Below are positions 5,166-63,100 of a DNA stretch of 64,000 nt, piece by piece. The stretch is from contig CM074515.1 of the NCBI GenBank assembly GCA_037379345.1, positions 21,576,001 through 21,640,000 on the forward strand, read 5' to 3'. Numbering within the stretch: the first letter of the stretch is position 1; each line of letters begins with the position of its first letter. Under the pieces are notes generated by a model. The model searched no databases. It was not told the DNA's origin and was given only the letters and a program-made list of their open reading frames with translations. The position numbers and the translations under genes are program-made. This stretch comes from Perna viridis. Its lineage: Eukaryota.

Positions 5166-5294
5166 NNNNNNNNNNNNNNNNNNNNNNNNNNNNNNNNNNN
5201 NNNNNNNNNNNNNNNNNNNNNNNNNNNNNNNNNNNNNNNNNNNNNNNNNNNNNNNNNNNNNNNNNNNNNNNNNNNNNNNNNNNNNNNNNNNNNN
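5166..5294. other. Assembly gap (129 N)
   Basis: Run of N. Confidence 1.
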
Positions 5295-19798: not shown

Positions 19799-20069
19799 TT
19801 AACAGTCAACATAGTACTGCTAATAAAGGGATCTGTTTACTCAACCATACATACAAAATACATGTATTTAACTCATTATCGATCAACAAACATTACTCAT
19901 AGAATGTGATTATGGATATTTGTTATATTATTGTAAATAGGTATTAAGAACTTTTACATTTATATCATAGTAACCAAGCTCTGATTATAATTTGGGCCAT
20001 CTTTCTCATTTTAACTTAAATTGTAACATAAATTTGACCAGTGCTAAACACATCTTCCTTTATTTTCAG

Positions 20070-20195
20070 GATTCAAATAACAGTCAACAGTTGGACAAAT
20101 TGAAGCAGACAAAAGCAGAGCTAGTGAAGAATATAGCTTCTCTTAAACAACAGATTGTTGATATCGAAACTCAGGAAAATGAAGCTCTTAGAGAG
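20070..20195 (+). CDS. PHLDB: PHLDB-like coiled-coil exon (DSNNSQQLDKLKQ...ENEALRE)
   Basis: tattttcag|GAT ... GAG|gtttgt; 126 bp, phase 0/0; coiled-coil composition. Confidence 0.9.
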
Positions 20196-21980: not shown

Positions 21981-22042
21981 ATAAGTAGATGAAAGTTTTC
22001 TGCAATGTAGTTGGTATAATATAAATGTTTGGGCTGTTGTAG

Positions 22043-22180
22043 TTGGAAATGGAACGAGCATTACTGGAAGGGGAACACAAAACTGAGATGGAAGAATTAC
22101 AACAGGAGCAAGAAAGGATCAACACACTTAAAATCCAACAAGCAGAACTCATAGAGAAATCAGCAAAAGAACGAGAAAAG
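22043..22180 (+). CDS. PHLDB: PHLDB-like coiled-coil exon (LEMERALLEGEHKTE...KEREK)
   Basis: ttgtag|TTG ... AAG|gtatac; 138 bp, phase 0/0; EMERALLEGE matches the LL5 signature EMERALLQGE. Confidence 0.93.
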
Positions 22181-23757
22181 GTATACAAGATTCAAGCTAT
22201 GTTAGTTACTGATGGCATATGAGAAATTTTTATAAATCTTTCTCCAAACTATTCCACTAAACAGGCAAACAAACAAATTTTGTGATGGTCTTCACATGAA
22301 ATTTATGTGAATTGAACCTTCACATTAAACTGATGCGAATTGAGTCTTCACATGAAGTTCATGTGAGACTTTCATGAAAATCTTGTTAACCAATTTCCAT
22401 GTGAAAACACATAATATTTCATGTTAAATTCATATGAATTTCAGGTGAGTCTTGATTCACATGAATGTAAACTATTTTTGCCATTGTACTGGGTAGTCTA
22501 TGGGTATAATTAAAAATAAAATATTATGGTATATTGAAGTTTCAAGACCTTTTTAGTGTCTGTACATCAAAAGATCTATATATTTCAAGATGACCAATGG
22601 GTGTTTTTGGTGGTAGTTCACATTATGACCTGTTAAAAAATTAGGATTATCAATTAAAAGTAGATTATACTCATAAAAATTATCAATTAACAAAAAATCA
22701 TTGGTTTTTGATTAGTACTTGATCATATAATTGATTTAGAATTTTAAAAAAATATTAAATAACTTCCATTACATAAAGTTTCATGATCCTGCTGAAAAAA
22801 GAACCAACGAGGGGTCTGTTTTTTAAAATAAAATATTAGGGATACACGTAGAGACAAAATAACCCAGGAAAATGTACTCTTTATTTTTATTAAAATTACT
22901 CTAAATTTTTTTCATTAATGCAGGCAATACTGTTGGTTAGTATATTGTTACGTGCTGCACCTACATGTGCATGTTCTATTTTTGTCGTGAACCCGGCTGC
23001 ACTTACATGTGCATGCTCCATTTTTGTCATGACTGCTTGCCAGTAAATCCAGTATGTCTATATTTAGGTTTTTAAAATATGTTTATGTTTCACAACTAAA
23101 ATATCATTCCAGTATCGTATTCACCGCTGTATCTATCTGTTAAAATCTGAATCATAAATATATGGAAAAAATTCTCCACTGTTTGATGAGTGGTGTCAGT
23201 TTTCAGTTATCTTGTGTGTAAGATGTCGGTGATATGAGGGGATGTCTTTATATGAATGCATATCTTTATACCATTGATATTGTTGTTGATGATAATATGA
23301 ACATTTTCATAAATACCAAGAACATCCGTACATGATACCCTGTGTCTCAATGGTATTAAAATTCATAGCTTTTGAATGATTCTTTATGGTGATTTTAATA
23401 TATACAAGTTATGAATATTTTACATTGACCTGAGTCAGTGGTTGTTAAGTTATGGATTCTTTATACTGACTTTTTGATAATGTTATAGATTTTTGAGTCT
23501 TTCATAAAGATATGACTCACAATAGTGCAATGCAATGGGTTCATCCTTTTACAGGTATTTTTAGACACAACTCTGAGATAATTGATTGGATTTTGGTTTG
23601 CGTACATGAAGTTGATCATTATCTTATTATCATCATTTTTTTGATTTGAATAATTTTATGAGAGTTATGGGACTTACATGCATTACTTTTTTTAATTCAG
23701 CAGGAAACCTATGGCAGTGTGTAGCAACTTTGTGAGAAAAAAAAAAAATAATAAAAT

Positions 23758-23983: not shown

Positions 23984-26187
23984 CAGTGGTTGTCATGACT
24001 ATAAGTATCTTAAACTGAAAGTTTTAAAAATCTACCAAGTCTAATTCAGTTTTTGTGTCCTGAGGTCAATTGAAATACAATCTCCTGCACAAAGGGTATA
24101 TTCCCTATCTCAAAGCTGTACACCTCTGTCACACTCCGTATTTAACTCCACCCCTTTATGCAAATTAGTACAGTGCACTGGAAACAGCTTCACAGATTTG
24201 CAATGAGCAATGGGGAGTGGTACATAGAGAAACATGAATTTGTTATAGGTCTGGGGAGGAGATTGGTTGAAATAGTGTGATATGACCTATATACTATCAG
24301 TTTTACTAGTACTACTTTCTGTGAATTCCTCTGTCATTCTCCTGGGTCCCCATAAAACTTTGCATGAGGCATTTTGTGCATTTTATTATGTAATTTAAAC
24401 ATACAGGTAGTATTTTATTAGTTTGTCCATTCTGCTTGTGAGGAAGAGAACTTGAAATTAAAGTTAACATAAAAAAAATTAGCACCTTCCCAAAAAGATT
24501 ATAATAAATCCATGAAAGTAACAAATATTGTTGACTTGTTAACACATTTTTAGTAACCTTGATATAAAATATACTTTGAATCCTTTTCTTACATGATAGG
24601 ATATTTTAAGTGCTAAACAGTTCAAAACGTTTTCTCAGAAAATGATTTTATTTCGAATGGTATGAGACCTACAGTATAATCCTACATACAGTATTAGGTT
24701 CTCTGGGATTGGCCCCTAGTGTAAACCAACAGGAAGTTTTGTCTTTCATTTACCGGTAAACTGTAGTTTTTTTTGGTCTATTTAAAGTGAAAATGTGAAA
24801 GAAAATATTAACAAGATAACTAATGAGGAAAGTGATTTATTTATTGCATGTAATCAAATAATGTTTTAGAGTGTCAAATCTGGTATGATTAATGATATTT
24901 TTTATGTAATTAATGCATTGAAAAATGTTAATCAATGCATGTAATATGTATCTGTGTAACATTTTAGAAAATAACCAATAATGACATTGTTATTTTCATT
25001 CTGTATACCCCTGGTATATTGATTTTTGTACATGAAGTGCATGCATCCTTAAAAAAATAGGAAATGTTGTAGAAAGTGGAAGAATTCCAGCAGCCATTTG
25101 AAATTGTGTTTTTTTTACTATTGTTAAGAGGGCTTTCCCTAGCTTACTGTAAGTGTTAGTTGTGCTTCTTGGCATCACTATATTTTTTATGTGACCCTTC
25201 TTTATGTAATTTTACTATGAGTACACACGTTTTTCCCTCTACACTTTGACTTATAGATTTTTACTTGTAAGGGAGTGATACATCCTTGTTTTTCAGTTAG
25301 GGTTCACATCATCACAATATAAACAACTAAAATTCCATGTTAGAAAATCATTTAAACCTGAGTGCTGCGGTAGGTTCCAGGAACATTGAAACTTCCTTTT
25401 CCACAATACATCAAATTGGTTTAAGACCTCCTTGTTTATCCTATTGATCTCATTACTTGACTTCCATGCTCCTGTGATGGCCATTAAAAATGGTTGGACT
25501 TGAATAGACAGCAACAGTGGAGATTATTTGATGATTCTGGCTACCCAGATTATCAAGCAGATAGGCTAGATATAAATTTAACAAAGAATTAAAAGCTGAT
25601 AACGGGATGTATATTTTTAAAAAATCCCAACCTTGATTAGAAATTAAAAGCTCCACATGAGTTGAATGTAAAAGTTCTTATGGTGAAATTTATTACATAT
25701 TCCTGAACACTGAATTCTAAAAGTTTTCTAGCTTTTATAATAAATGTTCAAATTTGATGGCATACTTAAAAGATTTTCATATACCAGTATTTTATGAAAG
25801 TGGGTTAAATACATTCAAAGTGAGCTTTCAAATGCTCTTGCTAGAGAATCACTTCAAGCTTTCTGTCTTAATTATGAAAATAAGTTATGAGGTGTTTTTG
25901 AGATATATGGACTGTAAATTTAAATGTGGAGAGTGAGCATAAGCTTGAAATATATTGAAGAAAATGTGAAGATTTATTATGGCATCTCCACTGCTTCAAA
26001 TTTATATACATTACTTAATGGAACAAAATGTTAAATATATCATTGAAAAAACGGTTAGATTTGCTGAAGAATTGATAGAGATTTTTTTATATTTTGTATA
26101 TTTCATATTGAAATTGTGAGGTTAAATCTGTTTTCCCAGTGTATTTTTACTGTTTTGGCTGAATATATGAACTTTGTTATTTTTAAG

Positions 26188-26379
26188 GAGATTGAGATAA
26201 TGGATAGAAAACAGGAAGAACTTTTCAGTCTAGAAAAGAAACATTTTGAGACTGAACAGTTACTCTCCAGTTGTAAACAGGATGAACAAGATCAGATCAA
26301 GGACCAGTTCGATAGGGAGCAAGAATTAATTGACCAGAAACGGAAGGATTTTGATGATCTGGAATTCAAACAACTGGAG
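26188..26379 (+). CDS. PHLDB: PHLDB-like coiled-coil exon (EIEIMDRKQEE...KDFDDLEFKQLE)
   Basis: ttttaag|GAG ... GAG|gtaatg; 192 bp, phase 0/0; FDDLEFKQLE matches LL5 FEDLEFQQLE. Confidence 0.93.
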
Positions 26380-26393
26380 GTAATGTTTTAATA

Positions 26394-26751
26394 CAGTGAA
26401 ATATATCTAAACTGAACTTCTTTGGACTGTAGAATTTGGTCGCTTATCCTACCGGTGCACCTGGTCCATGCTCCCAATTTTTAGTGGAGTCCGAGTTGCT
26501 CATTTGTTTTTGTTACTTTGTATGTATGATTTTAGTTACTTTATGTTCATTGTTGTGTATGTCTGCTTTCCATGTCTGGTCTTTGTCCCTGGATTACATT
26601 CATTTGATTACCGCTATAACCTTGGTTCCCTTAATTGCTCTTAGACAGGTGTTTGGGTCATCCAGGTTCAAAATACATTTGGACTGACACAATGGGAATT
26701 CTGAATATGTCTGGTTAAGACAGGTTTTCGGTTTAATCAGGGATTTTACTG
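26394..26751. mobile_element. Tc1/mariner-pogo-like MITE (TA|CAGT...ACTG|TA) carrying a nested insertion
   Basis: Same family as 44331-44508 (opposite orientation); interrupted at about 26442-26640; starts 14 bp into the intron after exon 26188-26379. Confidence 0.65.
26442..26640 (+). mobile_element. Dispersed repeat, probably a Penelope-associated terminal fragment, copy 1
   Basis: Highly similar to 34015-34217 (ccggt.cacctggtccatgctccc..ggagtccgagttgctcatt..ggtctttgtccctggattac). Family assignment is from recognition only. Confidence 0.65.
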
Positions 26752-28638: not shown

Positions 28639-28749
28639 AATCGACTGAAACAAATAGACACTCAACAAAGTGAGATGTTAACTGGTGTTAGGAAAGACTT
28701 GGAAATTTTGGAACAGAGTCGACTACAGCTTGTGGAACAGCTCAGAAAG
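28639..28749 (+). CDS. PHLDB: PHLDB-like exon (NRLKQIDTQQSEMLTGVRKDLEILEQSRLQLVEQLRK)
   Basis: ttttgatag|AAT ... AAG|gtctgt; 111 bp, phase 0/0; resembles LL5 ERLAILDSQ...LQLLQK. Confidence 0.88.
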
Positions 28750-31036: not shown

Positions 31037-31208
31037 GAAAAACCAGACAGTTTCTCAGACATCAACCAGAATTCCTCGCCGAAATCTTCTATAGTTAACA
31101 GTACTACTGTATCTCATTGGTTAACTAATTCTGCCAAAGGTGAGAGAAAGAAATCTGCCACAATGCTGGAGATCGAGAAAAATCACACACTTTTCCTAGA
31201 GCAACAAG
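31037..31208 (+). CDS. PHLDB: PHLDB-like exon (EKPDSFSD...SATMLEIEKNHTLFLEQQG) ending at a GC donor
   Basis: ttcttgcag|GAA ... CAAG|gcaagt; 172 bp, phase 0/1; SATMLEIEK...LEQQG resembles LL5 AATLQDIETKRQLALQQKG. Confidence 0.88.
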
Positions 31209-31963
31209 GCAAGTAGTTCGTACACTGACACTGGGTTATCTTTGATTGGACAAGAGTTATCTCCCTCATAACAGTATTTTATTTAATCATTTTACATGGA
31301 AATTTACTTGTTATAAAATTTCAAAAAAGCTGTACCGTCTGTGTTAGGATACCAATCCAACTTTTTTTTTTTTAAAATTGGTATTATGTTTTAAACCTAA
31401 TTACTCACTGCTTCTATGAAAGAGATATTGTTGCAGTTTTTAAAATGTTGAAAATAGCTTATGTTAACATAATTTACAATGCTTATGATTAATTTTTGAT
31501 GAAGCCATAAACATTTGCACAATAATTAGTAAAACATTTGGGAGATGATTCTGCATAAAGATTAAATATTAAAATCATGGATGATTTTCGAGTAGTAGAC
31601 AAAGTTGATGGACTATTTGTATCCATTTGATAACCCACTTTTTGCATGTTCAGAAAATAATTAAAACCTGAATGATCAGTGTACTAGTGCTTGACATAGG
31701 AGTTTACTAATGTAGTATGCAGAGACAATTCTTGGCTATTACTGTAGCTGAAGTTTTGTTTTTGCACTTTGTTTACTAATAACTGTTTTGTTTTTTAAAT
31801 TTATTATTAACTTTTTTCTCCTACTTACAGGTAGTTGTTTTATCAATTTCTTATTTCATGGTTTTGAGTTTTCTATGAGAGTAAAAAAATTATTCTTTGC
31901 ACAGATGTATTTTGTAGTTCTAGGTTCTCTCTTATTATTTTGTTATATTTTATGTGTTATATA

Positions 31964-35616: not shown

Positions 35617-36717
35617 CTCACAATTCTATATGGATTTGTCATGTCATAATATTTGTCAGCATTTATTTCATGTTACTTTGTTTTTAAAAATTTTCAGCTT
35701 TTAAGATTTTCTTGCATGAAACTTCACTATGATGTGAATAGAGATAAATAAATCATAAAACTATTTCTTTTAGGAATACTTAAGATGAAATTCTATTATT
35801 TAATTTGGGCAACATTATAATGATGTAAAATATTAAGTTGATATTGATTATAATTATGTCATACACCCTTTAACTTTGAAAACATGAGTTTGGAATACCA
35901 TTATGATTTTTCAATCAGGATTTAATACTGTTGTCTCTCAAACAAGTCAGAAATTCAATTATATCTTTACCATTATGTAAATCCTTTATCAGGGAGATCA
36001 TAAGTTAGTGTTTTATTTCCAAGGCATTAGCATGTGTCATCGTAGATCACTTTTTTGACATGTCTATTAAATTTGATAATAGTAGGAATCTTCTGCTTAT
36101 TTCCGATCTACATCAAATATTTTTAGTACCAAGCTTACTTAATTGTGGTGAGTCTTTTTTTGGTTTCCTTTGTTGTAATAATAAAGATGACTTTCAGGAA
36201 CTGAAATCCATTTCCAATTCCTTCTGGGAAAGTTAAGCCTTATCTGTTAGTGGAAAACCAAAACAAATCACTTTTATTTCTTCAGTAATGGAAATGTTGT
36301 TTTTTTTTTTCAATATTTGTTGAAAAGTTTTTTCTTACAAGTATAATTTTCAGGATATTTTTAAAATTGATGGTTTTTTTTAATACTTGTATTTCATTTA
36401 TTTAGAGCAGTGTAATTTAATATTTAACATTAAAGCTTCCTGAGACTGTCAATTATTTTATTTTCACATGTATATGGTGTTCAATAGCTTCAAAATATTT
36501 CTACTGCACTTAGCAAATTTAGTAATTCCCCCTCAGTATTTACATGACTGAAGGGGGGATTAAAAAAAATGTATTCATATTATTATAGCATGGCACACTT
36601 TCATTTTTTGGGGGTAATAACATCTTTTTTTCCATAGGAAGAACTTTCATAAACTGGGTGAAGCTGGTTGTTAAGAAAAGTTCTGATTATTACATTTTTT
36701 TATTATTTCCTTGTTAG

Positions 36718-36904
36718 GAAGTACATTGATTGAGCAAGAAAGGAAAAGACTAGTAGAATTGAAAAGGAGGGCAGCAGATGAAGGTCGGGCCCAGTGGGAG
36801 GAGAGAAAAATGAGAGAAGCTAATTGTAAAAGTTTTAACTCCCTCGAATCAGAGGACTCCAGTATTGCTAGCAGCTGTGAAACTCCTTCAGAGAAAGAAA
36901 CAAG
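36718..36904 (+). CDS. PHLDB: PHLDB-like exon (GSTLIEQERKRLVELKRRAADEGRAQWEE...SLESEDSS...EKET)
   Basis: atttccttgttag|GA ... ACAAG|gtatga; 187 bp, phase 1/2; resembles LL5 VIEEQRRRLAELKQKAAAEAQCQW and SLESSDS. Confidence 0.93.
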
Positions 36905-39762: not shown

Positions 39763-40846
39763 TATTATATCTAACTCAAATTAGACAGTATATTCACAAA
39801 TCATTTAGCTAATTTCTACAATCAAAAATAAAAAAAAAAAATAATAATAATATTGTATTTCAGTAATAATTTTTTATATTATTTAAGATGTCTTGATGCT
39901 AGTGTTTTTAAATTGGTATTTTTTTGTTTAGTGTACACAGTAGGAAAGAGTAACTGTACTGACATGAACTGTGTACACAATAGAAATTTGTAACTATACT
40001 GATATGAATCGAGATAAAAAATATTCAGCAAATATAGAAGAAATCATTTGAATAAGAGATGTTACTTCTGGTTATGAGAAATTTCCAAACAAATAAAATA
40101 TGTTCAATATTGGCCCAACACAGAGGAAAATGAAGCTTTGTTTATGGTGCAATGGAGGAGCGAGGACTGGGCATCTCGGAATAGTTATACATCCAAGTTA
40201 TTTAAGTGGTATCAAACTTTGCTCAGTAAATCATTATTATTCTCATAAAATTTTTAACACAGCTAAATAGGTTAGTAGTAGAACAAAAAAAATATAAGTT
40301 ATTTCAGCTTGGTAATTATTACTCTTGGCATAACAGCTCCATAAACAGTAAACATTTATAGATCTCTTCCCCATCCGTGTCCATTAAACTAGTTGAACTT
40401 GACAGAACAATATCTGTTTTTATAGTGTAAAGTGTTATTTATTGTACAAACTTCCGTAATTCACACTTGAAATGTTAATGAAGATTTATACATGAGTTGC
40501 ATGCATTTTGCATTCATAGCAGTATTGTCCTCACAAATAAATTAAACCTAGGTTTTTGGTTTAGATTATTATCTGAGAATTATTTTAAATTGCAATTACT
40601 GCAGGGTATAAATAATGAACATTACTGTAAATGCATCAGTATTATGGGAATATAATATTCTATACAATATAAATCCTTAATTGGCCAAGTCTATTTTTTC
40701 AAGGACACATTAGCAATCTTATTTCAAGGACACATAACAATGGCAATTAGTTAAAGTAATATAGACACTATACAAGTAAAACCTCAGTAATAAGGACACT
40801 TAGCAAGTACACCTTCATAATTGAGGACTTTAGGCAAGTACATAAT

Positions 40847-41062
40847 CATTAGTAATAACTATAGGCAATTACACATGTTCATCCTTATTAGTAATAACTA
40901 TAGGCAATTACACATGTTCATCCTTATTAGTAATAACTATAGGCAATTACACATGTTCATCCTTATTAGTAATAACTATAGGCAATTACACATGTTCATC
41001 CTTATTAATAATAACTATAGGCAATTACACATGTTCATCCTTATTAGTAAGAGCTATAGGCA
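40847..41062. repeat. 39-bp minisatellite x5.5 within a degenerate array (about 40700-41300)
   Basis: Unit attagtaataactataggcaattacacatgttcatcctt; flanks carry decayed aggacactta/ggcaagtaca units. Confidence 0.92.
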
Positions 41063-41975
41063 AGTTCGTCATTAATGAGGACTGTGTGCAAGTATTTTCA
41101 TTGATTAGGTCTTAAAGCAAGTACATCCTCAGTAATATATTAAGGCAAGTACATTCTCATTTGTGAGAAATTTAGGCAAGTACATTCTCATTAGTATGGG
41201 CTATGTGTAAGTACAGCTCATTAACAAGGACACTTAACTAGTGAGTCTTCATTAGTAAGGGAACTTAAGGCAATAACAAACCATTATTAAGGACACTTGG
41301 TGATTAAAACAAAATGACACAGTAGGTAAATGTTTTGTTTATTCTTTACAAAGACAAAATTTGAATTTCTGAATTTGTTCATCAGTACATTTGTACACAC
41401 AGAAGGCCTCTAATAGTACATGTAGTATATTGGAGTCACAAATTAAAAAAATGAAATACACAGTTCTGTAAAATGAAAATATATTTAAATATTTAAATTC
41501 AAAGTTGTGAACTTCTCTGCCTGTGACTTGGTCCAAGTTCTGAGTTACCTGTGAATTCAGTTCCTGATGAAGGAAGCTGTTATTGTGTTGCTACTTGAAT
41601 AGAAATGATTATTTCCATGTATAGGACATATAATTAGAGCAAATTGGTCCTAAGAGATTATATTCTACATTCATTATCTCTCTGGTTGCAGCAGTTATGT
41701 CTGTTTTAAGCTTAATATAAAAGTACCATTTATCAGATTGCCATATTAGCAGCCATTACTAGAGCTTGGTTGTACACCCACTATTATGGTTGTGGTTTAG
41801 TGTTAATTCTTGAATAAATGTGTGTAATTTTTGTTTCTGTTCACATGTACTTACTGGTATTATTCTCTTACTTGTTTGATTAGATAACTTTTTATAGAGT
41901 TGTGTCCCTTGAACTATGTCTTTTTTATTTTATTTTCAGTTTTCTTGAGTATTTTAGAGTTGGTTTCACATATTG

Positions 41976-47554: not shown

Positions 47555-49355
47555 ATTTTCCTCCTGTTGTCTTTAGAACTTCCTCTATATGAACAAGCAA
47601 CAAATTACTGCAATATAAGGGCTTTTGAGTATGGTTGTTGAAATTTTTCATGCATGGTTGTCATGGCAAAATCATTCTTAATTGGAAATATGATTTTGCA
47701 CATGGTTACATCTGTCAAATTCTGTACCATGATTTTAGCCATAATTTAATTGTCAAAACACTTGATCTGTACTCTGTGGACCAGATTTGATCAGCAGCTA
47801 CTTGAAAATATTCTGTCATCGTAAAAATCGGTAAATCATACGAAAACTAACCGTCACAGATATAATAATGTGGTAATTATGAGGAAGATCTTGAAGGTTT
47901 GCATTTTTGCTAGAGTCTGTAATCTAACTAACTTGTCTATGGAATTAAACAGTGGAAACTGAAGTACCATTAAGTTTTCATGAAATGTTAAATTTTACCA
48001 GAAAATATTCTGTCTGACGGCAAAATTGATACTTTATAGTGTGTGCAGAATGTGGTTTTGAGTACAGCTCGATATGTAATCATATAGCGATGACAAAGTA
48101 GCATCAATATCATTACATTGGTGTTTATTTATACCTTGTAAGAAGAATCATATACATATTACCAAAATTCTATCTGTCTTTTCATACGTCATGTAACTTT
48201 TTATTCAGTAGATTTTGATGACACTTTACATATGAGTTTGGCATTATTTGTTAATGGATATGCGAAGTAAAAGATAAAGAAACACATTTCAGTTGGTGTG
48301 GAATTATATTAATTCTTACAATTATATCCATGATATTTTTTGCTTTTTATAAGTGAATTTTTTGCTGAATTTATACAGCTTTTTTTTCTTTTTTTTTAAG
48401 AACACAAGAACAGACCAAACTTTCCACCTATGTCCCTTTCAGTGGTTATGATCTGTGAGACAAATTCAGAAGTTAATCAAATATTCATTGGAAGTTCTTC
48501 CCAATCCCACATAACATGTTAGGTGTAGCTTTCATGATGGATTACAGAGATTGACATGACCATAATTGATTGTCTTTTATGACTACCATATAAATAAGGT
48601 GTTTTCATGGTCAGTTACCAGTCTGAGTTATCATTGATTAATAATTATAAGTCCTGTTTTTGACCCAATGAGACTTATTTTCTCCATTTCAATTATTCTG
48701 GACAGTCTTTGTTGGTATAATTACCAATGTTTTTTCCTGTTTTGGACACAGACAAAGCTATTGTCCCAGCTGTAGATGATATCAATTCTTTGAATTGATT
48801 TAATCAAACTGGACCCAGTTGTGATGGTGCTTCAGATACAGAATACACAATGATGCAGGAAGTTGCATATGTTTTTGCATGCTTTCATAGAGTACTGGGT
48901 TAAAATGTATAGGACATCTGGGTAATAGAATGATAGGCTCTTACAGAGCAAAATAAGGTTTTGTGTGTGAAATCTAAAATGTGTGTCTTTAGAATTTAAG
49001 ACATTATTCTGCTGTTCATAGGAGACTTAGCCATAATAAGTAACTTCTAACAATATAAATCTACAAGCTTACAAATATCACTTTTCCTTAAGGTTAATTT
49101 CACTAGCATTGGTTATTGTGAAATAGAATTTCTATAGCCTGTTGCATGGTTACTGAACAGGGAACCACTGCATTCAAAATCCTACAAGTATTGTTTTGTT
49201 TTTGAAATATTTCCTATCTGTTATAAATATTTAAAACTAATATTTCTCTTTTTTAGTAATGAAAATAAAATCTAGGAACTGGTTCTGTAATGTCATGTGT
49301 AACTTTCTTGATTTTTAGTCACTGACCATTTCTGTTCTGAAACATTTATAAGGTA

Positions 49356-54433: not shown

Positions 54434-55584
54434 TATTGTCTTTGATTACCATTGGAAGAACTGGTGTCAGGTAGTCAGTTGTAGAGAGTTTTGGTTCCCT
54501 TTTTTTGGAAAGAGGGTTTAGGGGAGCTGACTGATTCCTTATTTTATTGCCGTTCATATGACCTTTGTAAATGGAGAATAAGTTTACTGGTACTTCATTG
54601 GTAGTACCAAAGGTACTTTTACTATTATGGTTAAGTCTTTTATCTTTTATATTTTCAATACACATGTAAACTTCATTAAAAATTGATTTCCAAAACAATT
54701 TAATTTAAATAAAAGCAACTGTAAATCAATTAGGTTACCTGCAAGTCAGATTAACTTTCTCAAGAAAACATAGTGAGAAAATCATTGAAGCCTTTATAGT
54801 ATTACGTAACAAGTCTAAAGGTTGTTTCCGTTAATTCTTTATGTTTTGCAAAAGATTGATTGATCGATTGATTACCTGAGTTGAACTTGGATTTTAATGC
54901 TATTACAGCCATCTTAGGTCATGCTTAGCAGATATGTGATGCTGAAATATGGAGAGATAACCATCATCAGGTTGGAAAACAATTGTTTATAGGATTTACC
55001 AAAGTCAGTTGATGACTGCTAGTTTATCTCTTCTCAAAGGTCAAGGGATTAAAATATGATATTGGTTGATGAATCTGTAATCTAAAATATGCTAATGAGT
55101 TTGAATAATTTAATAGATTTGGAAAAAATTGCATTTAAATTGAAGTTTTAGCATAATTGATTTCTAACAAAGGAAAAATTTCATGGGTACTCTTGTTTAA
55201 AACATTTTAAAACTTGAAGGATGTTTGATGCTAACACAAAAATGATTTCATCAGCAATTGATTGAATTTGTTTTTGATTATCATCACGCAATTGTTAGTG
55301 TCTGGAGTCTATAAAGAAACACATGTTTACTGATTTTGTTTGGCCTTAGAGATTTATAAATTAAGTTCTATGGTACTTTGGAAGTCCACTTTCTTACTTC
55401 ATATGACATAAATAGAGCATTGGACTTAGTGCAGACACTGTTGCCATAGATATCAGAGCGTAGAAGGGGTTCAAATCATGCTGAGAAAGCAAGTAAATTT
55501 GCGTCCTTGCATCAATTTTAGAGTTTAAATGGACCTTAAGTAGACTTTAAAAATGTTCTTTTTTTCATCTTTGCATCAACATTT

Positions 55585-56432
55585 AATGTTGATCCTAGCT
55601 GTGTTGATGTTGATACTGGCTGTGTTAATGTTGATCCTAGCTGTCTTGATGTTGATCCTAGCTCTCTTAATGTTGATCCTGATCCTAGCTGTGTTAATCT
55701 TGATCCTAACTGTCTTGATGTTGATGTTGATTCTAGCTCTCTTAATGTTGATCCTAGCTCTCAGTGTTGATCCTGATCCTAGCTGTCTTAATGTTGATGT
55801 TGATCCTAGCTCTCTTAATGTTGATCCTGATCCTATCTGTGTTAATGTTGATCCTAGCTCTCTTAATATTAATCCTGACCCTAGCAGTGTTAATGTTGAT
55901 AATAGCTGTCTTAATGTTGATGTTGATCCTAGCTCTCTTAGTGTTGATCCTGATCCTAGCTGTGTTAATGTTGATCCTAACTGTCTTAATGTTGATGTTG
56001 ATCCTAGCTCTCTTAATGTTGATCCTGATCCTAGCTGTGTAAATGTTGATCCTAACTGTCTTAATGTTGATGCTGCTCCTAGCTGTGTTAATGTTGATCC
56101 TAGCTGTCGATTATAGCTTTGTTAATGTGGATTGTAACTTTGTTAATGTTGATTCTAGCTTTTTTAGTGTTGATTGTAGCTTTGTTATTGTTGATCCTGG
56201 CTTTGTTAATGTTGATTGTACTTTGTTATTGTTGATCCTAGCTGTGTTAATGTAGATCCTAGCTGTCTTCATGTTGAGGTTGATCCTAGCTGTTGATCCT
56301 TGCTTTGTTAATGTTGATCCTAGCTTTGTTATTGTTGATCCTAGCTGTGTTAATGTTGACCATAGCTTTGTTAAAGTTGATCCTAGCTTTGTTATTGTTG
56401 ATCCTGGCTGTATTAATGTTGATCCTAGCTTT
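55585..56432. repeat. 21/27-bp minisatellite array
   Basis: Unit aatgttgatcctagctgtgtt with 6-bp (gttgat or gatcct) insertion variants. Confidence 0.95.
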
Positions 56433-57771
56433 GTATGCTATATGGTTATATAGTTCTGTACTATCAGTAACATTGTAGAGTTTCCCACATCTCATTAGAC
56501 TATTTTTTTTAAATTTCCTTATAACAAATAAATCTTATTGCTCTATTTAACTAAAAAAAGTGATGACATGAAAACTGTTCATTTTCAGAATCCATAAAAT
56601 ATTAAAAACCAGTAAAATATATATACTAACAATACTTCACATTATTTTTTTTATTTTTTTTTTTGATAAAAAATTCAAGTTAATGAGCCTGTACTTTTTG
56701 TTTACATATCACGATCAAATGATATAATGATTATGTCATTTATGAATAATTGAATTTGACAAAGTTGTTGTTGTGCTAATTACTTATAGTGAAAACGATT
56801 GAAATATTATTATCATGATACCACTAGAATTACAGAAAAAGTTTCTAATTTCTCTACAATCAATAAAACAATAGAGCCTTTGATGAGGGTCTATCATCAA
56901 ACAATTCCACTACAAATTCTCCCCTGATTGGTGGACATGGATTCTTGGGACAAACAGAGAATTTATTATTGTGAGGTGTGTCGCAATTATCAAAATTACT
57001 GCATTGACATTTCAGTAACTGGAGTCCACAGTGCTTAGAATTATTAGCAAAAAAATCTATATACTGAGATAGAATGATATAACCATTATCATAAACTGTA
57101 AAGGTGTTGAACTGTGGGTAATCATAAAACAGAAAGTCTACATCCTGTCAGAGATACACTTCTATTGATTCATTCACATTTTTTTAAGGACAAAAATAAA
57201 ATGAGGATGTTCCAATAATGGACTTGATTAATGTGAGGAGTTTTTAACTTTATGGGATCTTATCATGATTTTCTGATTGCTTTGGAAGCCTTTTATGATT
57301 TCTCTACACTTTAGTGAATTTAGAGATGTTGGAAAGTTCATTAAAGTATGCTGTAGTGTTGTGGTGAATTCTACGATACATGGATCATTTAAACCCAACA
57401 TTGGTGTTCTGATAGCTGCTTTACTCATGTACATTTAAACATGAGGAAATTGGGTTTTTGTGGACATGCTAATAGCCGTTGTTTGTATTGGTTATACAAT
57501 TTTCCATGAAAAATTGCCAAAGTCACGCATATTCTCTATATCTGTTAATTTCATAATTTTATTTATATTTACCGGTGAGTTACGACTAATCATTGGAAAT
57601 ATACAGCAAAATTATCTTGTAAAATATTTCTGTTATGTTCTATTGATTCTGTTAAATATTTATAAAGAATAGAATTTATTTTACAATATATGTAAACTGT
57701 GTATTGAAGACCAATTATTTGCAATGATGATTGAGGAAAATATAATTGACAGTTAATCACTCTTTGATCTG

Positions 57772-57861
57772 ATTATAAGGCAGTCTCGAGTAAAGACCGA
57801 ACCGTTACAGCAAGTTGCAGCAGGTACCTGCTATTTATTATTAGAGGTGCATTAATTCTTA
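57772..57861 (+). promoter_or_regulatory. Candidate TATA-type core promoter and 5' UTR of the 57862 exon
   Basis: TATAAGG at 57774-57780, 88 bp before the ATG, followed by a local CpG cluster (tctcgag, accgaaccg) in otherwise CpG-poor DNA. Confidence 0.4.
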
Positions 57862-58937
57862 ATGCAAAGTTCTGCTAATTGGAAAATGGATTTGAGTGGA
57901 ATTTTCTCAGAGTATAGGAGAAAAAATGGGATTTCTCACCAGGTTGGAGATGTGGGAAAATCAGCTATGCCAGGATTTAGTAACCTGACTTATGGAAATA
58001 AGAGCAGTTTGTCACTGGACTCTCCAACACGGACTGAGAAATTACAGGTAACTTTCTCAACTCAAAGGGAAGAGCGAGTAAAGGATATTGAACGTGACTC
58101 TGGTATTGAAATTTTAAATAACAAAACAATTGATAGTGGGTCTAAAAATTCTGACAAGTTTTTGAATAGCTTAAGTAACAGTAACACTGTAGATGATGGT
58201 TTTGTTGATATATCTAGTCCAAACGATAGCGATTCAACATCATCTGTGGAATCCAAAATTTCCATTCAGAGTGTCAGAACACCAACTGACATGGCAATAG
58301 CAAGGATAGTGGACAGTAATGGTGGACAGGCCTCACCCTCGGTCAGAACACCACAGAAAAATGTTAGAATCAGTCTCTCTAGACCTGAAGTAATGCAGAA
58401 AACAAGTTCAGGGATAATGTCAAAACCAGGAACACCACAAAAATGCATTGCATCAAAACCAGGAACACCTCAGAGGTGTTCCACTGGTGTTTCTCCTCAG
58501 CATAGTACATCACAAAAAGCAAGCTGTTTGAAAAAGATAGCTGTGAATTCTCCATGTACAAGTAGGGAGCTAGACTTAGTTATGAATCATCATCGAACAA
58601 GTCGGGAGCAGGACAGAGTAGCTTGTTTACATAAGAGAACCATGTCTGCAGACAGATTTGCAAATCACAGCTTGAGCGATTCAAGGAGTAACCTAGGACC
58701 ACCTTTGAATATAAAACACTATAAGAAACAACAGGAGTCTCTTTTCGCAGAGAATAGGAATTATGATCAGTTGTTCCAGAATTTATCACTACGCAGTGAA
58801 ATGAAAAGTCGCCAGGAATTTAACAGTAAGAGTGATATAGATGATATGGAATTATTACCCTCATATTTTAATTCTCAAGGATTTCAACTGGATTATTGTT
58901 GGTTCTGTGGAAGACCTATGAATCTGAATAGTTCAAG
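57862..58937 (+). CDS. Probable alternative first coding exon of the PHLDB-like gene (or first exon of a nested gene); about 358 aa, Ser-rich, with a C-terminal CWFC motif
   Basis: 359-codon ORF with higher GC than its flanks. In-frame stop at 57853 just upstream of the ATG. The ORF stop (58939-58941) lies inside a strong donor, TCAAG|gtaagg, of phase 2, the same phase as the donor at 36904. Confidence 0.7.
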
Positions 58938-60031
58938 GTAAGGGCATCAGGGATATTTCTCTGTTAAGAAGGAATTTTCTACTGTTAGTAAATAGTCCAG
59001 TTTTGGGGTAGACTTATATTTTTTCGTGGTCTTCTGATTGTTTGTGTGTGTGTGTTTTTCTTTTGTTTTGATCTATAAAACACATTTTAAGACTCTTGTG
59101 AAGGTACATTGCTGTATGTTAACAACAATGCCACCAAGCTAATGTACTATGTAAGATTCACTGACTTCGTGTATTGTGTAACTTCAGTCAATTGTAGTCT
59201 TTTTTTTTTCTTGTTTGTCTACTGATGCTGAAGAAGAGGATATTTTGTGTCCAATTTATGGTACTATGAGTATAATTAACTAAGGAAAATAACGAGAAGA
59301 CACATAAAAAACACCTTTGTTGTAAAATAATCTGATCTTTGTATAGCTTCATTCCAAGAGTCAATTGAACTTAACACTCCCGGTGAATTATTTGTCTGAT
59401 CTTTGGTTTATAGCTGCTAGCCAATCATAAATGAATTGTCTAGTTACAGCAGTATTGCTGCGAAACTAAAACCCCTCAAGACCTTTCGTCCATTTTAGTC
59501 TTCTAATTAAATTTAATTTTCTTGGCTTCTTTCCTGTTTTTGGCTGTGCTAAGATGAAAATTTAAATGTCATTACCAGCAATGAAATTTTATCAATAATT
59601 GACATTATACAGCAGATAACAGGAGTATATATTTCTTTTTTTCCTGTTATACAAAGTTTCCAAATTAAAGAGATTTTAATTGAATTGATTTGTCTTATAG
59701 TGCTTATCATTAGACTTCAATTTTCTGTGATTTTTGTCCTTTTTTTCCCTGAATGCAGATTTTTAAACATATTTCTTATTGGATAAAATTGCAGTTATTC
59801 TAAATCATGCTCCAAGGTATACCCTATGTATCAGTACCAGTGATCCTTATATTTACCTTCAGTATCTATATCAAGGCCTGCATTGTTCTTCAGGTTTCAC
59901 CTTAATCAATATGAAGGCTTTAAGTGCTTCTAATTTTCCTTAGGTATCAATTTCTTGGCCAGAAATACTCTTCAGATTTAACCTTAAATATTAATATCAA
60001 TATCTGTCTCTCAGATTTACCCTAAGTATAA

Positions 60032-60151
60032 ATATCAATGCCTAAAGTGCTCCTCGGATGTACCTTAGATATCAATGCCTAAAGTGCTCCTCGGATGTAC
60101 CTTAGATATCAATGCCTAAAGTACTCCTTGGATGTATCTTAGATATCAATG
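60032..60151. repeat. 37-bp minisatellite x3, with decayed units upstream to about 59810
   Basis: Unit atatcaatgcctaaagtgctcctcggatgtaccttag. Confidence 0.9.
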
Positions 60152-63100
60152 AAATGTTTGACCTAGTGAAATACAAAAATGACACCCCTCTATCCTTCCC
60201 GAAGAATTTCGACACTTTCAGTATTGAGAATCTTCTCATGCAAAAATATGATAAAAATTAATTTAGTCAAATACAATGTACAGTATGTATGTGTTTTGGA
60301 ATGATACAAGGGAAATATAGTGGTAAAAATATGTACGTAAGTTCCATATCAGTGGGTCTTTTACTTGAGATACACAAACTTTGGATAATACAGAGATGTT
60401 TTCATTAATTAGTTCAAAATATACAAATTAGTTAAAATAATTATGAATTTCCATTATGAACTTTTAGCATTACTGAAGTTAGAGTTTTGTCAATGTTGAA
60501 AAAATGGAATCACATTTTTCCCAAAATTTACTATAATAAAAACATGCAGTTATAACTGAATTTACAATATACTAACCTGGAACATGAAAGAGACTTATTT
60601 GTGGAATGTTTCTTATCAAAAGACTTAAAAAACATTGTCATTATTTTATTGCAATGTTATCCAACAGCAACTACGCAGACTATAAGCATAAAAGATAACT
60701 TATGTAAGCTACAGACACTGTAAGATGTTATAAATACTTTGACATTTTGTTTTATAAGTCTTAAGGAAAATATAGTTCTGGATTATGGAATGCTTGTAAC
60801 CTATATACGACAAGATTGATGTAAACAAAGTTTCTTGATCAGAAAAAGGGTTTTTGTGAGTTTTGATCATGTGATCAGATTTGAATTTCTAGGAGACGTC
60901 CTGTTTTGAATATATAGTTTCTGAAAACCTTGATATTAGTTCAAAAGCAACATGTTTAAGATCTTTCCTTTTGGTTTCCTGAAGGTTTGCAGATTAAACA
61001 GTGAATTCTGCTATAGGGGAATTTTAATATTTTAGGAAGAGCTTTGATGACTTAAAAGTCTTTCTAGATTAAATACTTTGTCTATCTGATCAGCTGGTGG
61101 CATTTACCTGCTCAATAAATCTTTCGCTCTTAAAAACCTCTTTAGTTTAAAAAAAATAACATTTTCAGTTTGACATTTTGTATTTAAAGCAAATTTAATT
61201 AAGTAATACAATGATAATCCAAGAAGACCTTACATACTTTAATCAATGAACTGTACTAAGATTTTTTTCTTTGTAATACACCCCTCCTCAAACAAAACTT
61301 GGGGGTTTGTAGGAATTAGCCAATTTGTCTGTTTTTCACTTTGTTTTTTTTTCACATTTGATGTTAAAGCAATTTCTAAACTATGCAAGGGATTTTGATG
61401 AAAATTCACAGGAAGATTAGGCATCATATATAGTAGTGTGGGGAGGAATATGTTATTACTACAATCATATGAAAGCTGGCATGTATCTTTGAAAAGCAAT
61501 CTGCAACTTAATTGAACCCTTTTTATAAAAAGCTATCCACTGCTAATCAGATATTACCATAAAAATTACAATAGTACTCTTGTATTTAGCTTGACCAATA
61601 GTCCTATGAGTATCATCCAGTATTATTTTAAGCTTCAGTTGTAATAGTGATGCCAACAGGAAATTAGAAATGTTAAGTATCGGTGGATCAGTTTTGTTTC
61701 CGAGAACATGCAGTTATTCTAATTGCTTTAGCACAGCTCCAATACACCAAGTGGTTATATTCGACCATAACAATTTTCCCACACCTCAGGATAATTTGTA
61801 CATCTCCCATTTTCATCTATAATTCACTATTATATAAAAGGTCTGTGTCATGACTAGTAATGTTAGAAAATGTCAAATGCCGAGAAATTTTCTGATGCCT
61901 AATTGGAATAAATATAATGTTATGAGCAAATTATATGGAAAATTATTTCAGAACCCGTTTTGTCTTTTTATGTTCTATTTTACCATATGGGGATTATTAC
62001 ATTGGTTAACCGAAAACAGCTACTGTTTTGAGTTCATCACTAATTGAGAGACCAAAAATATACACTACCAACTATTAATGAGCAAATCAGAGTTTAAAAC
62101 TTGGAGAAAGATTTTAACTTTTAACATCCTAAAAGATTAAAGGCTCCTCTATTATATTAGAATTAATGATGTAGCCCTTTAACAAGAGTACAGACAGTAC
62201 TAATGCCTGAAGTCATGTAATGTCAATTCTGTAGTCCTTTAAAAATCTTTAAATTTTTTTTCTCTTAATTTGTTAAAAAAAAGTGCCTCCAGCTTTTGGT
62301 TTACCTGGGTAGTCAAGGAATCTCATTTATGATTAGTGCTCTGTATGCTTCCTCTCTTTTATTATTCTAATTTGTTGTTGTTGTCTTCTGTTTTTTCCTT
62401 ACCTAGGCATTGCCCTTTGAGACTTGAATCATTACTTTAATTCTAACTGTGCTTTATTTGAAATTTCTTCCATGTTAAGAGGGTTTATAATAAGAACAAA
62501 TATTTTATGGATCTAGATGAATGTGAGGTCTTGAGAACCCTAACCTTTCACAGATTAAACAATCTAGGTGTGGCTCCTTTACATTTTCCTGGAATTATCT
62601 GTTTGAGTAATGACCTCGAAATTTTGTAACTTGAAAGTCAGTGAGTTTGAACCCCCTGATGTTTCAAAAATAATAAGTTATTAACAGAATTCCTGGAAAT
62701 GTAACAGTCAATGACTTATATCTCGATGACATTGAAAAGTGTCAAAATTTGAGGGGAAAAATGGTTTTCCAGTTTGAAAGCATTGTTTTATTTTTACCTG
62801 TTAGAAATCATCCAAGGTTAACCATCGAATTATAGATTTATTTAAGGAATGAGATGTTTTATTTTTACAAGTAGACAGCTGCATTGTGTTTAGAGTGCTG
62901 AACATGCTTCTTTGGTAGTGCTTGGCAAATATATTAGCATTCATAGTTTGTATTAAATCAATGCTAACACAAAAGATCATGGAAACTAATCTTATTGACT
63001 AAGGCTCAGGTGTTCAATGACATTGTTATCAGTGATGTTTGAATAGGGTCAGGAAAAGTCTACCGGAATCTTAGCATTTTAAACTACTATAAGCCATAAG

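What the first reader, a model, noticed from the sequence alone, without database searches (positions are those of the whole stretch)
57862..58943. Hidden alternative first exon: an orphan-looking 359-aa ORF probably swaps the whole N-terminus of LL5/PHLDB
Seen: the ORF lies on the same strand about 21 kb downstream of the last identified PHLDB exon. It has an upstream in-frame stop, a TATA-like box 88 bp before the ATG, and a stop codon that is part of a strong donor (TCAAG|GTAAGG). That donor is phase 2, like the donor of exon 36718-36904 (ACAAG|GTATGA). I saw no AATAAA within about 2 kb downstream. Known: LL5 proteins end in a coiled coil plus PH domain, which has not appeared by 64000. Inference: a short isoform in which this 358-aa region replaces >1280 aa of upstream sequence but keeps the PIP3-binding PH domain.
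Basis: partly seen in the sequence, partly recalled or inferred. Interest (0 to 1): 0.85.

Follow-up and report, generated by a model that had tools for sequence, protein, structure and literature searches.

The report
Alternative first exon of mussel PHLDB/LL5
The "orphan" ORF is a real alternative first coding exon inside a long intron of the mussel PHLDB/LL5 gene; it is spliced onto the shared coiled-coil and PH-domain exons to give a short isoform, a common kind of gene architecture, here with an unexplained motif shared with snails.

Summary
ORF 57862-58941 (+) is real and far longer than chance allows.

**RNA evidence.** Transcript contigs from four studies all end at the predicted donor (58937). 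They continue with letters that occur only at 70138, the first shared coiled-coil exon of PHLDB, 11.2 kb downstream. The same contigs run colinear with the genome upstream of the ATG, to 57577 at least, and show no acceptor use.

**Comparative evidence.**
- Related mussels have an in-frame stop two codons before the conserved ATG (57886) and no AG there, so this is a first coding exon, not a cassette.
- Long PHLDB1 models of oyster, Solemya, Gigantopelta and octopus join the 36904-type exon directly to the 70138-type exon.
- A canonical Mytilus galloprovincialis model skips the nested exon.
- A Mytilus edulis model (544 aa) is exactly the short form.
- dN/dS is 0.14-0.18.

**Predicted product.** About 579 aa: a Ser-rich, probably disordered N-terminus, then an 81-aa coiled coil and a PH domain.

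**Not mussel-specific.** Snail proteins (Biomphalaria, Bulinus) have a single large first exon ending in the same CWFCGRPM motif, spliced in the same phase to the same exon.

- The likely start is 57886.
- The TATA-like box lies inside transcribed sequence.
- AATAAA does occur 1.6 kb downstream.

This is an ordinary mechanism, and the motif is a modest novelty. The scan holds no earlier finding of this on other DNA.

The parts
36718..36904 (+). Last canonical (long-isoform) PHLDB exon before the 33.2-kb intron that holds the alternative exon. Its donor is phase 2 (ACAAG|GTATGA).
   Evidence: Sequence. Matches Ostrea and Solemya PHLDB1 models at 80-84% identity. In those models this exon is joined directly to the LSSGED exon.
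57126..57566 (+). Weakly covered transcribed stretch upstream of the exon. It may be an extended 5' leader or promoter-proximal transcription. The strand cannot be told from contigs.
   Evidence: Short low-depth contigs in 3 of 4 runs (57126-57457, 57141-57403, 57387-57562, 57327-57502). There is no coverage at 56000-57056 in any run. A leader starting here would hold 19 ATGs.
57577..57885 (+). Minimum 5' leader of the short-isoform transcript, colinear with the genome.
   Evidence: The X1 contig covers 57577-58937 without a break. The X2 contig starts at 57712 and the X5 contig at 57773. No loose ends or joints lie here.
57774..57779 (+). It lies inside transcribed sequence, so it is not the only promoter, if it is one at all.
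   Evidence: Position. Contigs of X1 and X2 start 62-197 nt upstream of it.
57853..57855 (+). In-frame TAA that closes the frame upstream of the ORF.
57862..57864 (+). First in-frame ATG. It is specific to this species and in a weak context (T at -3, C at +4).
   Evidence: Aligned to ATT in three related mussel sequences. Context.
57868..57869 (+). AG that could serve as a phase-2 acceptor, which would make 57870-58937 a 1068-nt in-frame cassette. It is not seen in use and is not conserved.
   Evidence: candidate list. No loose end here in 4 runs. The aligned position has no AG in L013, L014 and L017.
57886..58937 (+). Coding part of the alternative first exon, from the conserved ATG (MDLSG...) to the donor: 350 codons plus 2 nt. 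It encodes a Ser-rich, probably disordered N-terminus.
   Evidence: Homologues start at this Met. DNA similarity to relatives is confined to 57852-58942. dN/dS is 0.14-0.18. No Pfam hit. AlphaFold2 mean pLDDT is 37.
58348..58518 (+). Region of repeated (S/T)PQ(K/R) modules. It holds three of the exon's four [ST]Px[KR] sites. Module copy number varies between species and alleles.
58771..58923 (+). The most conserved block of the exon, ending in the invariant CWFCGRPM motif (58897-58920). The motif is shared with gastropod proteins.
   Evidence: Invariant columns. Motif found in Biomphalaria and Bulinus proteins next to the same junction.
58938..58943 (+). Splice donor GTAAGG. The ORF's TAA stop (58939-58941) is intronic. 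The donor joins to three shared exons that lie beyond the window end and so cannot be listed as parts. In extended window coordinates these are 70138-70234 (G000:C5:21646138-21646234, coiled coil, phase-2 acceptor), 74134-74280 (G000:C5:21650134-21650280, coiled coil) and 76002-76445 (G000:C5:21652002-21652445, linker plus PH domain, stop TAG at 76443-76445).
   Evidence: Contigs of all 4 runs leave the genome after 58937. Their 26 loose letters map uniquely to 70138. GGTAAG is conserved in 4 species, and similarity ends there. Downstream exons. PH domain: Pfam PF00169, E 1.4e-19.

Best explanation
The ORF is the alternative first coding exon of the mussel PHLDB/LL5 gene.

**Transcript structure**
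- It lies in the 33.2-kb intron between canonical exon 36718-36904 and the shared exon at 70138.
- Transcription starts inside that intron, at or upstream of 57577.
- Translation most likely starts at the conserved ATG at 57886.
- The exon's phase-2 donor at 58937 is spliced to the acceptor at 70138, the one the long isoform uses.

**Predicted product**
- A protein of about 579 aa (587 aa if 57862 is used).
- A 351-aa Ser-rich N-terminus, probably disordered, replaces the whole long-isoform N-terminus.
- That N-terminus carries conserved short motifs, (S/T)PQK modules and a terminal CWFCGRPM motif.
- It is fused to the last 228 aa common to all isoforms: an 81-aa coiled coil, a linker and the PH domain.

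**Shown here**
- The ORF, the splice, and colinearity with the genome upstream.
- Conservation, purifying selection, the PH domain, and the nested arrangement.

**Inferred**
- The promoter position and the start codon.
- That the PH domain binds PIP3 as in mammalian LL5.
- That the short form lacks the regions which bind filamin, ERC1 and CLASP in mammalian LL5beta. It would then bring different partners to the same membrane sites, or pair with the long form through the shared coiled coil.
For: **Splice**
- Contigs of X1, X2, X5 and X7 (four studies) end at 58937 followed by 26 letters.
- Those letters occur once in the 124 kb examined, at 70138.
- The exon DNA has a single copy in the genome, so there is no retrocopy.

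**First exon**
- Contigs are colinear from 57577, 57712 and 57773, with no joints and no loose end at 57870.
- Relatives have an in-frame TGA two codons before the ATG and lack the AG.
- DNA similarity between species starts about 30 nt before 57886 and stops at the donor.

**Same acceptor for the long form**
- 36904 to 70138 is in frame.
- The junction ...KET-S-LSSGED... is present in Ostrea, Solemya, Gigantopelta and Octopus PHLDB1 models.
- In M. galloprovincialis the nested exon (L023 40287-41234) lies between the canonical exon (22004-22192) and the shared exon (47755-47859), and the annotated canonical model skips it.
- Long models map to the window exons but not to 57862-58941.

**Short-form model**
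- M. edulis CAG2232768.1 (544 aa) is the N-terminal exon plus coiled coil plus PH domain.

**Selection**
- dN/dS is 0.14-0.18.

**Deeper conservation**
- Biomphalaria and Bulinus proteins of 805-808 aa have one 590-aa first exon ending in the CWFCGRPM motif.
- In the Biomphalaria locus, the one with DNA examined, that exon has a phase-2 donor spliced to the homologous exon.

**Mammalian domain map**
- Taken from PMC10337942.
Against: - The 5' end is not mapped, because contigs cannot show a cap. Weak contigs at 57126-57566 could be pre-mRNA of the long isoform, or a long leader with 19 ATGs.
- The runs are labelled RNA only by guess. The spliced junction is what shows they hold RNA.
- Use of the 70138 acceptor by the long isoform in this species rests on homology and reading frame, not on reads.
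- A phase-compatible AG exists at 57868-57869. Biomphalaria has a strong phase-compatible acceptor right before its ATG, so cassette use in some lineage or at a low level is not excluded.
- No protein-level evidence exists.
Confidence: 0.88

Rival explanations
1. It is an internal cassette exon of the long isoform. Acceptor 57869|57870 and donor 58937 would insert 356 in-frame codons between exon 36718-36904 and the exon at 70138.
For: - 57870-58937 is 1068 nt, a multiple of three, and both ends are phase 2.
- Biomphalaria has a strong acceptor one base before its ATG in the compatible phase.
Against: - Contigs from three runs read straight through 57870 into upstream genomic sequence, with no loose end there.
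- The AG is absent from three related mussel sequences, which have an in-frame TGA two codons before the ATG.
- In M. edulis the only AG after the upstream in-frame stop is in the wrong phase.
- No long PHLDB model contains this sequence.
- The polypyrimidine tract is poor.
- Contigs drop rare variants, so low-level use is not excluded.
Confidence: 0.05
2. It is an independent single-exon gene nested in the intron. Its transcript reads through 58938, stops at the TAA and is polyadenylated nearby.
For: - The ORF has its own stop at 58939-58941.
- ATTAAA lies at 59506 and 59664, and AATAAA at 60535.
- One low-depth contig in X5 covers 58948-59194.
- Two Logan contigs carry the unspliced 359-aa product. 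These may simply be DNA.
Against: - In all four runs the exon contig leaves the genome exactly at 58937 and enters the PHLDB exon.
- The donor GGTAAG is conserved, and similarity ends at it.
- The Mytilus and snail models continue into the coiled coil and PH domain.
Confidence: 0.03
3. It is transcriptional or splicing noise, or a decaying exon with no protein function.
For: - No Pfam domain and no confident fold.
- A long leader containing upstream ATGs is possible.
- No proteomic evidence.
Against: - A 350-codon frame is kept open in at least six mytilid sequences and two snails.
- dN/dS is 0.14-0.18, and long invariant blocks exist.
- It is expressed and spliced in runs from four studies.
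Confidence: 0.03

Closest known systems
PHLDB1/PHLDB2 (LL5alpha/LL5beta) of vertebrates, and the annotated PHLDB1 genes of molluscs
   Same: - The three shared exons encode the family's C-terminal coiled coil, the ARPLTRYLP linker and the PH domain.
- They are 80-84% identical to the Ostrea and Solemya models, and the C-terminal module is about 60% identical to vertebrate proteins.
- Many N-terminally shorter vertebrate isoforms are listed in databases.
   Different: - The N-terminus here shares no detectable similarity with any part of the long PHLDB proteins.
- It has no FHA domain.
- By position, it lacks the regions that bind filamin, ERC1 and CLASP in mammalian LL5beta (PMC10337942).
PHLDB3 (LL5gamma), the short vertebrate paralogue
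   Same: It has a similar overall build: a short protein with a coiled coil and a C-terminal PH domain and no FHA domain (PMC7278972).
   Different: - PHLDB3 is a separate gene, not a promoter variant.
- No sequence comparison with PHLDB3 was made here.
Mytilus edulis gene model CAG2232768.1 (544 aa) and Biomphalaria glabrata / Bulinus truncatus 805-808-aa proteins ('serine-rich adhesin for platelets')
   Same: - All have one large Ser-rich first coding exon ending in CWFCGRPM.
- All continue into the coiled-coil and PH exons.
- A phase-2 donor was checked in the M. edulis and Biomphalaria loci.
   Different: - They are automatic models filed as separate genes and are not described in any paper I found.
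- Apart from the last 50-150 residues, the snail N-terminus is not alignable with the mussel one.
- Whether the snail protein is an isoform of the canonical gene or a paralogue is unresolved.

Membership tests
PHLDB / LL5 family | C-terminal PH domain | tested here: met
   The last exon (76002-76442 in extended coordinates, = L008:2002-2442) hits Pfam PF00169 at E 1.4e-19, 71 bits against a cut-off of 25.1.
PHLDB / LL5 family | Coiled coil and conserved linker directly before the PH domain, collinear with known members | tested here: met
   The shared exons align to the Ostrea, Solemya and Mytilus PHLDB1 models at 72-100% identity, in the same order.
PHLDB / LL5 family | The upstream exons of the same locus belong to PHLDB1, so the ORF is intronic to that gene | tested here: met
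   The 942-aa open frame 10884-13709 finds proteins that NCBI names PHLDB1 in Mercenaria, Mya, Octopus and Gigantopelta. Exons up to 36902 map to these models.
PHLDB / LL5 family | PIP3 binding by the PH domain | not testable with these tools
   Inferred from mammalian LL5beta and PHLDB1 (PMC10337942, PMC2934625). The basic beta1-beta2 motif reads HKR here; from memory it is KKR in mammals, and no mammalian sequence was inspected here.
Alternative first exon (alternative promoter) isoform | The exon is spliced to a downstream exon shared with the other isoform | tested here: met
   The 58937-70138 junction is present in contigs of four runs.
Alternative first exon (alternative promoter) isoform | The exon is not entered through an acceptor: the transcript is colinear with upstream genomic DNA | tested here: met
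   Contigs run from 57577, 57712 and 57773 without joints or loose ends. No conserved acceptor exists, and upstream in-frame stops are present.
Alternative first exon (alternative promoter) isoform | The long isoform skips the exon and uses the same acceptor | tested here: inconclusive
   In frame and true of the orthologous models, including M. galloprovincialis on L023. No reads from this species were laid on 36904 or 70138.
Alternative first exon (alternative promoter) isoform | A mapped transcription start or cap within the intron | not testable with these tools
   Contigs cannot show a 5' end. Contig ends at 57126-57141 and at 57577-57773 are only lower bounds.

The most novel reading that the evidence does not exclude
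The short form may be an ancient LL5 isoform class, at least as old as the bivalve-gastropod ancestor. On this reading, the invariant QL(D/E)YCWFCGRPM motif next to the coiled coil is a functional element. It could be, for example, a CxxC pair that forms a metal clasp across a coiled-coil dimer, or a docking site. The rest of the N-terminus would be a fast-evolving, phospho-regulated disordered region.
Probability: 0.35. Interest if true: 0.5.

Novelty: new member of a known kind. Interest (0 to 1): 0.33.

Why it matters
**Annotation**
- This settles the annotation of one locus. What looks like an orphan ORF in an intron is the 5' coding exon of a short PHLDB/LL5 isoform.
- Existing automatic annotations file that isoform as a separate gene (M. 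edulis) or under a misleading name (Biomphalaria).

**LL5 biology**
- Invertebrates make a short PH-domain form from the same gene that makes the long scaffold. In vertebrates a short form of similar build is encoded by a separate paralogue (PHLDB3).
- The work also turns up a short, strictly conserved cysteine motif of unknown function that could be tested.

The mechanism itself, alternative promoter use, is commonplace.

Tried and rejected
- **Pfam.** The ORF gave no family, even at E 10.
- **Exhaustive HMM search.** A profile of the mussel alignment against 1.84 billion representatives found only the mytilid cluster. The snail homologues were found later through the shared C-terminus.
- **ESM Atlas.** No usable hit.
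- **AlphaFold2.** On the 8-sequence alignment, mean pLDDT was 37 and pTM 0.13. No fold search was worthwhile. With so shallow an alignment this is weak evidence for disorder.
- **PDB sequence search.** The conserved 55-aa tail gave nothing below E 0.7.
- **Exon duplication idea.** I tested whether the tail of the alternative exon is a diverged duplicate of canonical exon 36718-36904, since both have phase-2 donors and MAFFT aligned R.E.N.KS. hhalign gave probability 0.05, so this is rejected.
- **BLASTP against long PHLDB proteins and the 942-aa exon.** Nothing better than E 2.
- **Genomic loci of long PHLDB genes in other molluscs.**
  - Ostrea and Gigantopelta were not on record.
  - The Solemya and Potamilus gene ranges were too long to fetch.
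  - Presence of the nested exon outside mussels and snails therefore could not be tested.
- **Upstream DNA conservation.** None is detectable between this species and its relatives. Two close relatives are 94-99% identical over about 1.4 kb upstream, against about 88-90% in the downstream intron. This is suggestive only.
- Exons were handled one by one, by reference.
Full report
**Observation.** The ORF 57862-58941 (+, 359 aa) is present as described.
- An in-frame TAA lies at 57853-57855.
- The frame ends in ...TCAAG|GTAAGG, so the TAA stop (58939-58941) sits inside a good donor and the exon would end in phase 2.
- Exon 36718-36904 ends ...ACAAG|GTATGA, in the same phase.
- The window is 32% G+C, and a stop is expected every 13 codons. 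An open frame of 361 codons is expected about 4e-8 times per window, and 200 shuffles of the 20.8-kb intron never exceeded 179 codons.
- The exon also stands out in composition: 38.5% G+C against about 31% around it.
- Two details were wrong. AATAAA occurs at 60535, 1.6 kb downstream, with ATTAAA at 59506 and 59664. The first ATG is not the conserved one.

**The gene around it.** The window is G000:C5:21576001-21640000.
- The 942-aa open frame at 10884-13709 finds proteins that NCBI names PHLDB1 in clams, octopus and a snail, and an Ostrea protein with a PH domain.
- Ostrea and Solemya long models map onto window exons at about 10890-13268, 20037-20198, 22043-22177, 26179-26400, 28642-28749, 31079-31210 and 36717-36902.
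- Beyond the window end they map onto 70136-70237, 74131-74283 and 75999-76439, and nowhere onto 57862-58941.
- I fetched 60 kb downstream and set the three last exons by their splice signals: 70138-70234, 74134-74280 and 76002-76445, with stop TAG at 76443.
- The last exon hits Pfam PH at E 1.4e-19.
- The next gene downstream looks like an alkaline phosphatase.
- The ORF therefore lies in a 33.2-kb PHLDB intron, 21.0 kb after the canonical exon and 11.2 kb before the shared exon.

**RNA evidence.** I laid Logan contigs of four runs from four different studies on 56000-60500.
- In every run the contig that covers the 3' part of the ORF stops matching at 58937 and goes on for 26 letters.
- These letters occur once in the 124 kb examined, at 70138, directly after a ...tttcag acceptor. 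They read, with the two carried-over bases, S-LSSGEDNL.
- The exon DNA occurs once in the genome, so a processed copy cannot explain the joined form. The runs therefore hold spliced RNA, although their label 'RNA' was only a guess.
- On the 5' side, the X1 contig is colinear with the genome from 57577 to 58937, X2 from 57712 and X5 from 57773.
- No joints and no loose ends lie anywhere between 57577 and the ATG.
- The loose ends reported at 57549 and 59217 belong to unrelated abundant contigs that share only 18 letters.
- Short low-depth contigs cover 57126-57566 in three runs. Nothing covers 56000-57056, and only one weak contig (X5, 58948-59194) lies in the downstream intron.
- The transcript therefore starts within the intron, at or upstream of 57577. 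The exact start is unknown, because contigs cannot show a cap.
- The TATA-like TATAAG at 57774 lies inside two of the contigs, so it is not the only promoter, if it is one at all.
- A leader from 57577 holds four upstream ATGs besides the in-frame one at 57862. A leader from 57126 would hold 19 ATGs in all.

**First exon or cassette?** An AG at 57868-57869 would give a 1068-nt, phase 2-2 cassette in frame with both neighbours, so this rival had to be tested.
- The contigs read through it.
- I fetched three related mussel sequences from metagenome and assembly contigs (L013, L014, L017). The aligned position has no AG, and a TGA lies two codons before the ATG.
- In M. edulis the only AG after the upstream in-frame stop is in the wrong phase.
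- All homologous proteins start at the Met that corresponds to 57886. That ATG has A at -3 and G at +4, whereas 57862 has T and C.
- Between this species and its relatives, DNA similarity runs from 57852-57854 to 58942 and nowhere else nearby. The donor GGTAAG is conserved, and similarity collapses after it.

**Use of the same acceptor by the long form.**
- The join 36904 to 70138 is in frame.
- The resulting junction...SEKET-S-LSSGED..., is what the Ostrea, Solemya, Gigantopelta and Octopus models show.
- In M. galloprovincialis (L023) the canonical exon lies at 22004-22192, the homologue of our ORF at 40287-41234 and the shared exon at 47755-47859. The annotated 546-aa model goes from the first to the third and skips the nested exon.
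- The M. edulis model CAG2232768.1 (544 aa, named PHLDB1) is the other path: 316 aa of the nested exon plus the 228 shared residues.
- I could not lay reads of this species on 36904 or 70138 because the single read-laying run was used, so this step rests on homology.
- All four exon contigs break at the same point, 26 letters into the shared exon. That is what a branch in the assembly graph would give if a second path enters there, but I do not count it as evidence.

**Selection and age.**
- dN/dS is 0.16-0.18 between this species and the three relatives, where dS is saturated at about 2. It is 0.14-0.15 between the more distant pairs among those relatives, where dS is about 0.16.
- An exhaustive profile search found only the mytilid cluster, which at first suggested a lineage-specific exon.
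- A search with the shared C-terminus then turned up Biomphalaria glabrata and Bulinus truncatus proteins of 805-808 aa. Their N-terminus ends ...SYQLEYCWFCGRPMPPFG directly before the shared exon.
- On the Biomphalaria locus (L021), this N-terminus is one 590-codon exon with a phase-2 donor (ACAAG|GTAGGT). It is followed by a 13.4-kb intron and the homologous acceptor.
- BLASTP links the last 50-150 residues of the snail and mussel exons at E 3e-8 to 3e-7.
- A Batillaria model has a related end...SYDLETCC.
- The exon is therefore at least as old as the bivalve-gastropod split.
- Whether the snail protein is an isoform or a paralogue is open. Its C-terminus is more diverged (65% against 81% for Haliotis), and no canonical exon lies within 10 kb upstream. 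A strong acceptor sits one base before its ATG, in a phase that would allow an upstream coding exon.
- I could not obtain the long genes of oyster, Solemya, Potamilus or Gigantopelta to look into their introns.

**What the product is.**
- From 57886 the spliced frame is 1052 + 97 + 147 + 441 nt, which gives 579 aa. It gives 587 aa from 57862.
- The 351-aa N-terminus is 16.5% Ser. It has nine (S/T)P sites, four of them [ST]Px[KR].
- The (S/T)PQK module varies in copy number between species and alleles, with 2 to 6 copies.
- It has no Pfam family, no look-alike in the ESM Atlas and no PDB relative.
- It is modelled without confident structure: pLDDT 37, with only a short N-terminal helix and a low-confidence helix before the motif.
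- Conservation is concentrated in blocks:
  - the first 37 residues;
  - VKDIERDSGIEI;
  - an acidic Ser-rich block;
  - SCLKK...NSP;
  - the last 50 residues, ending in CWFCGRPM.
- This pattern fits a disordered region that carries short linear motifs.
- The shared part is an 81-aa coiled coil, a linker and the PH domain.

**Likely mechanism (inferred).**
- In mammalian LL5beta the PH domain binds PIP3.
- Residues 323-356 bind filamin, 306-562 bind ERC1 and 563-916 bind CLASP. The full-length protein self-associates, probably through its coiled coils (PMC10337942).
- If the mollusc protein is organised alike, the short isoform keeps membrane targeting and one coiled coil but loses the cytoskeletal and scaffold contacts.
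- It would then either bring other partners, bound by the new N-terminus, to the same membrane sites, or modulate the long form by pairing with it.
- The proline-directed sites suggest regulation by phosphorylation.
- The CxxC motif directly before a coiled coil could form a metal site across a dimer.

**Comparison and novelty.**
- Alternative first exons are common, and databases list many shorter PHLDB1/2 isoforms in vertebrates.
- The same short form exists as automatic models in M. edulis and, partially, in M. coruscus.
- I found no paper on it.
- This is therefore a new, well-supported member of a known kind. Its modest added value lies in three points: the nested exon is old, it evolves under constraint, and it ends in an unexplained invariant motif.

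**Limits.**
- The transcription start, the start codon, the relative abundance of the two isoforms and any function are not shown.
- The run of N near 5.2 kb was left alone.
- The three shared exons lie beyond the window end and are therefore described in the text and under the donor part, not as separate parts.

Noticed in passing
window 55583-56434: An 850-nt minisatellite with periods of 21, 27, 48 and 75 nt and 65-84% matches. It lies 1.4 kb upstream of the alternative exon and about 0.7 kb upstream of the first transcribed contigs. It creates long spurious open frames in several reading frames.
   Followed up: no
extended window 71085-71110 (G000:C5:21647085 onward) and L022:19667-19729: Copies of the 3' end and donor region of the shared exon 70138-70234 recur in the intron after it. 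The translated fragment ...EQVHFVS appears again at 71085. M. edulis also has a copy about 290 nt after its exon, 81% identical over 21 aa.
   Followed up: partly
window 59407-59532: A 125-nt intronic stretch matches the intron downstream of the homologous exon in all three related mussel sequences at 64% identity, E 1e-3 to 2e-4. Part of it (59505-59524) also matches unrelated abundant contigs, so it is probably a dispersed repeat rather than a conserved element.
   Followed up: no
window 60032-60151: A 37-nt tandem repeat, 3.2 copies with 96% matches, in the intron downstream of the exon.
   Followed up: no
window 58348-58518 and proteins P0003, P0004, P0005, P0059: The (S/T)PQK-containing module of about 14 aa varies in copy number between closely related sequences. 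This gives products of 337, 351, 366 and 376 aa, so the repeat expands and contracts in frame.
   Followed up: partly
L021:9985-10003 (Biomphalaria glabrata): A strong acceptor (gttgtttttag) sits one base before the ATG of the snail's large first coding exon, in a phase compatible with a phase-2 upstream donor. That exon is 1773 nt, a multiple of three. In snails it might therefore be entered from an upstream exon.
   Followed up: partly
extended window about 86967-92917 (G000:C5:21662967-21668917): The next gene downstream on the + strand has exons resembling alkaline phosphatase, with translated fragments such as ...GMGVPSVTAARILRGQ... and ...VVTADHSH.... It was not searched.
   Followed up: no
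window about 5166-5294: A run of 129 N, either an assembly gap or masked.
   Followed up: no
L013 vs L017, 1.4 kb upstream of the homologous ATG: In two closely related mussel sequences the 1.4 kb upstream of the exon is 94-99% identical, peaking at -930 to -730. The downstream intron is about 88-90% identical, and synonymous sites differ by 15%. This may reflect a conserved promoter or leader. It was not tested statistically.
   Followed up: partly
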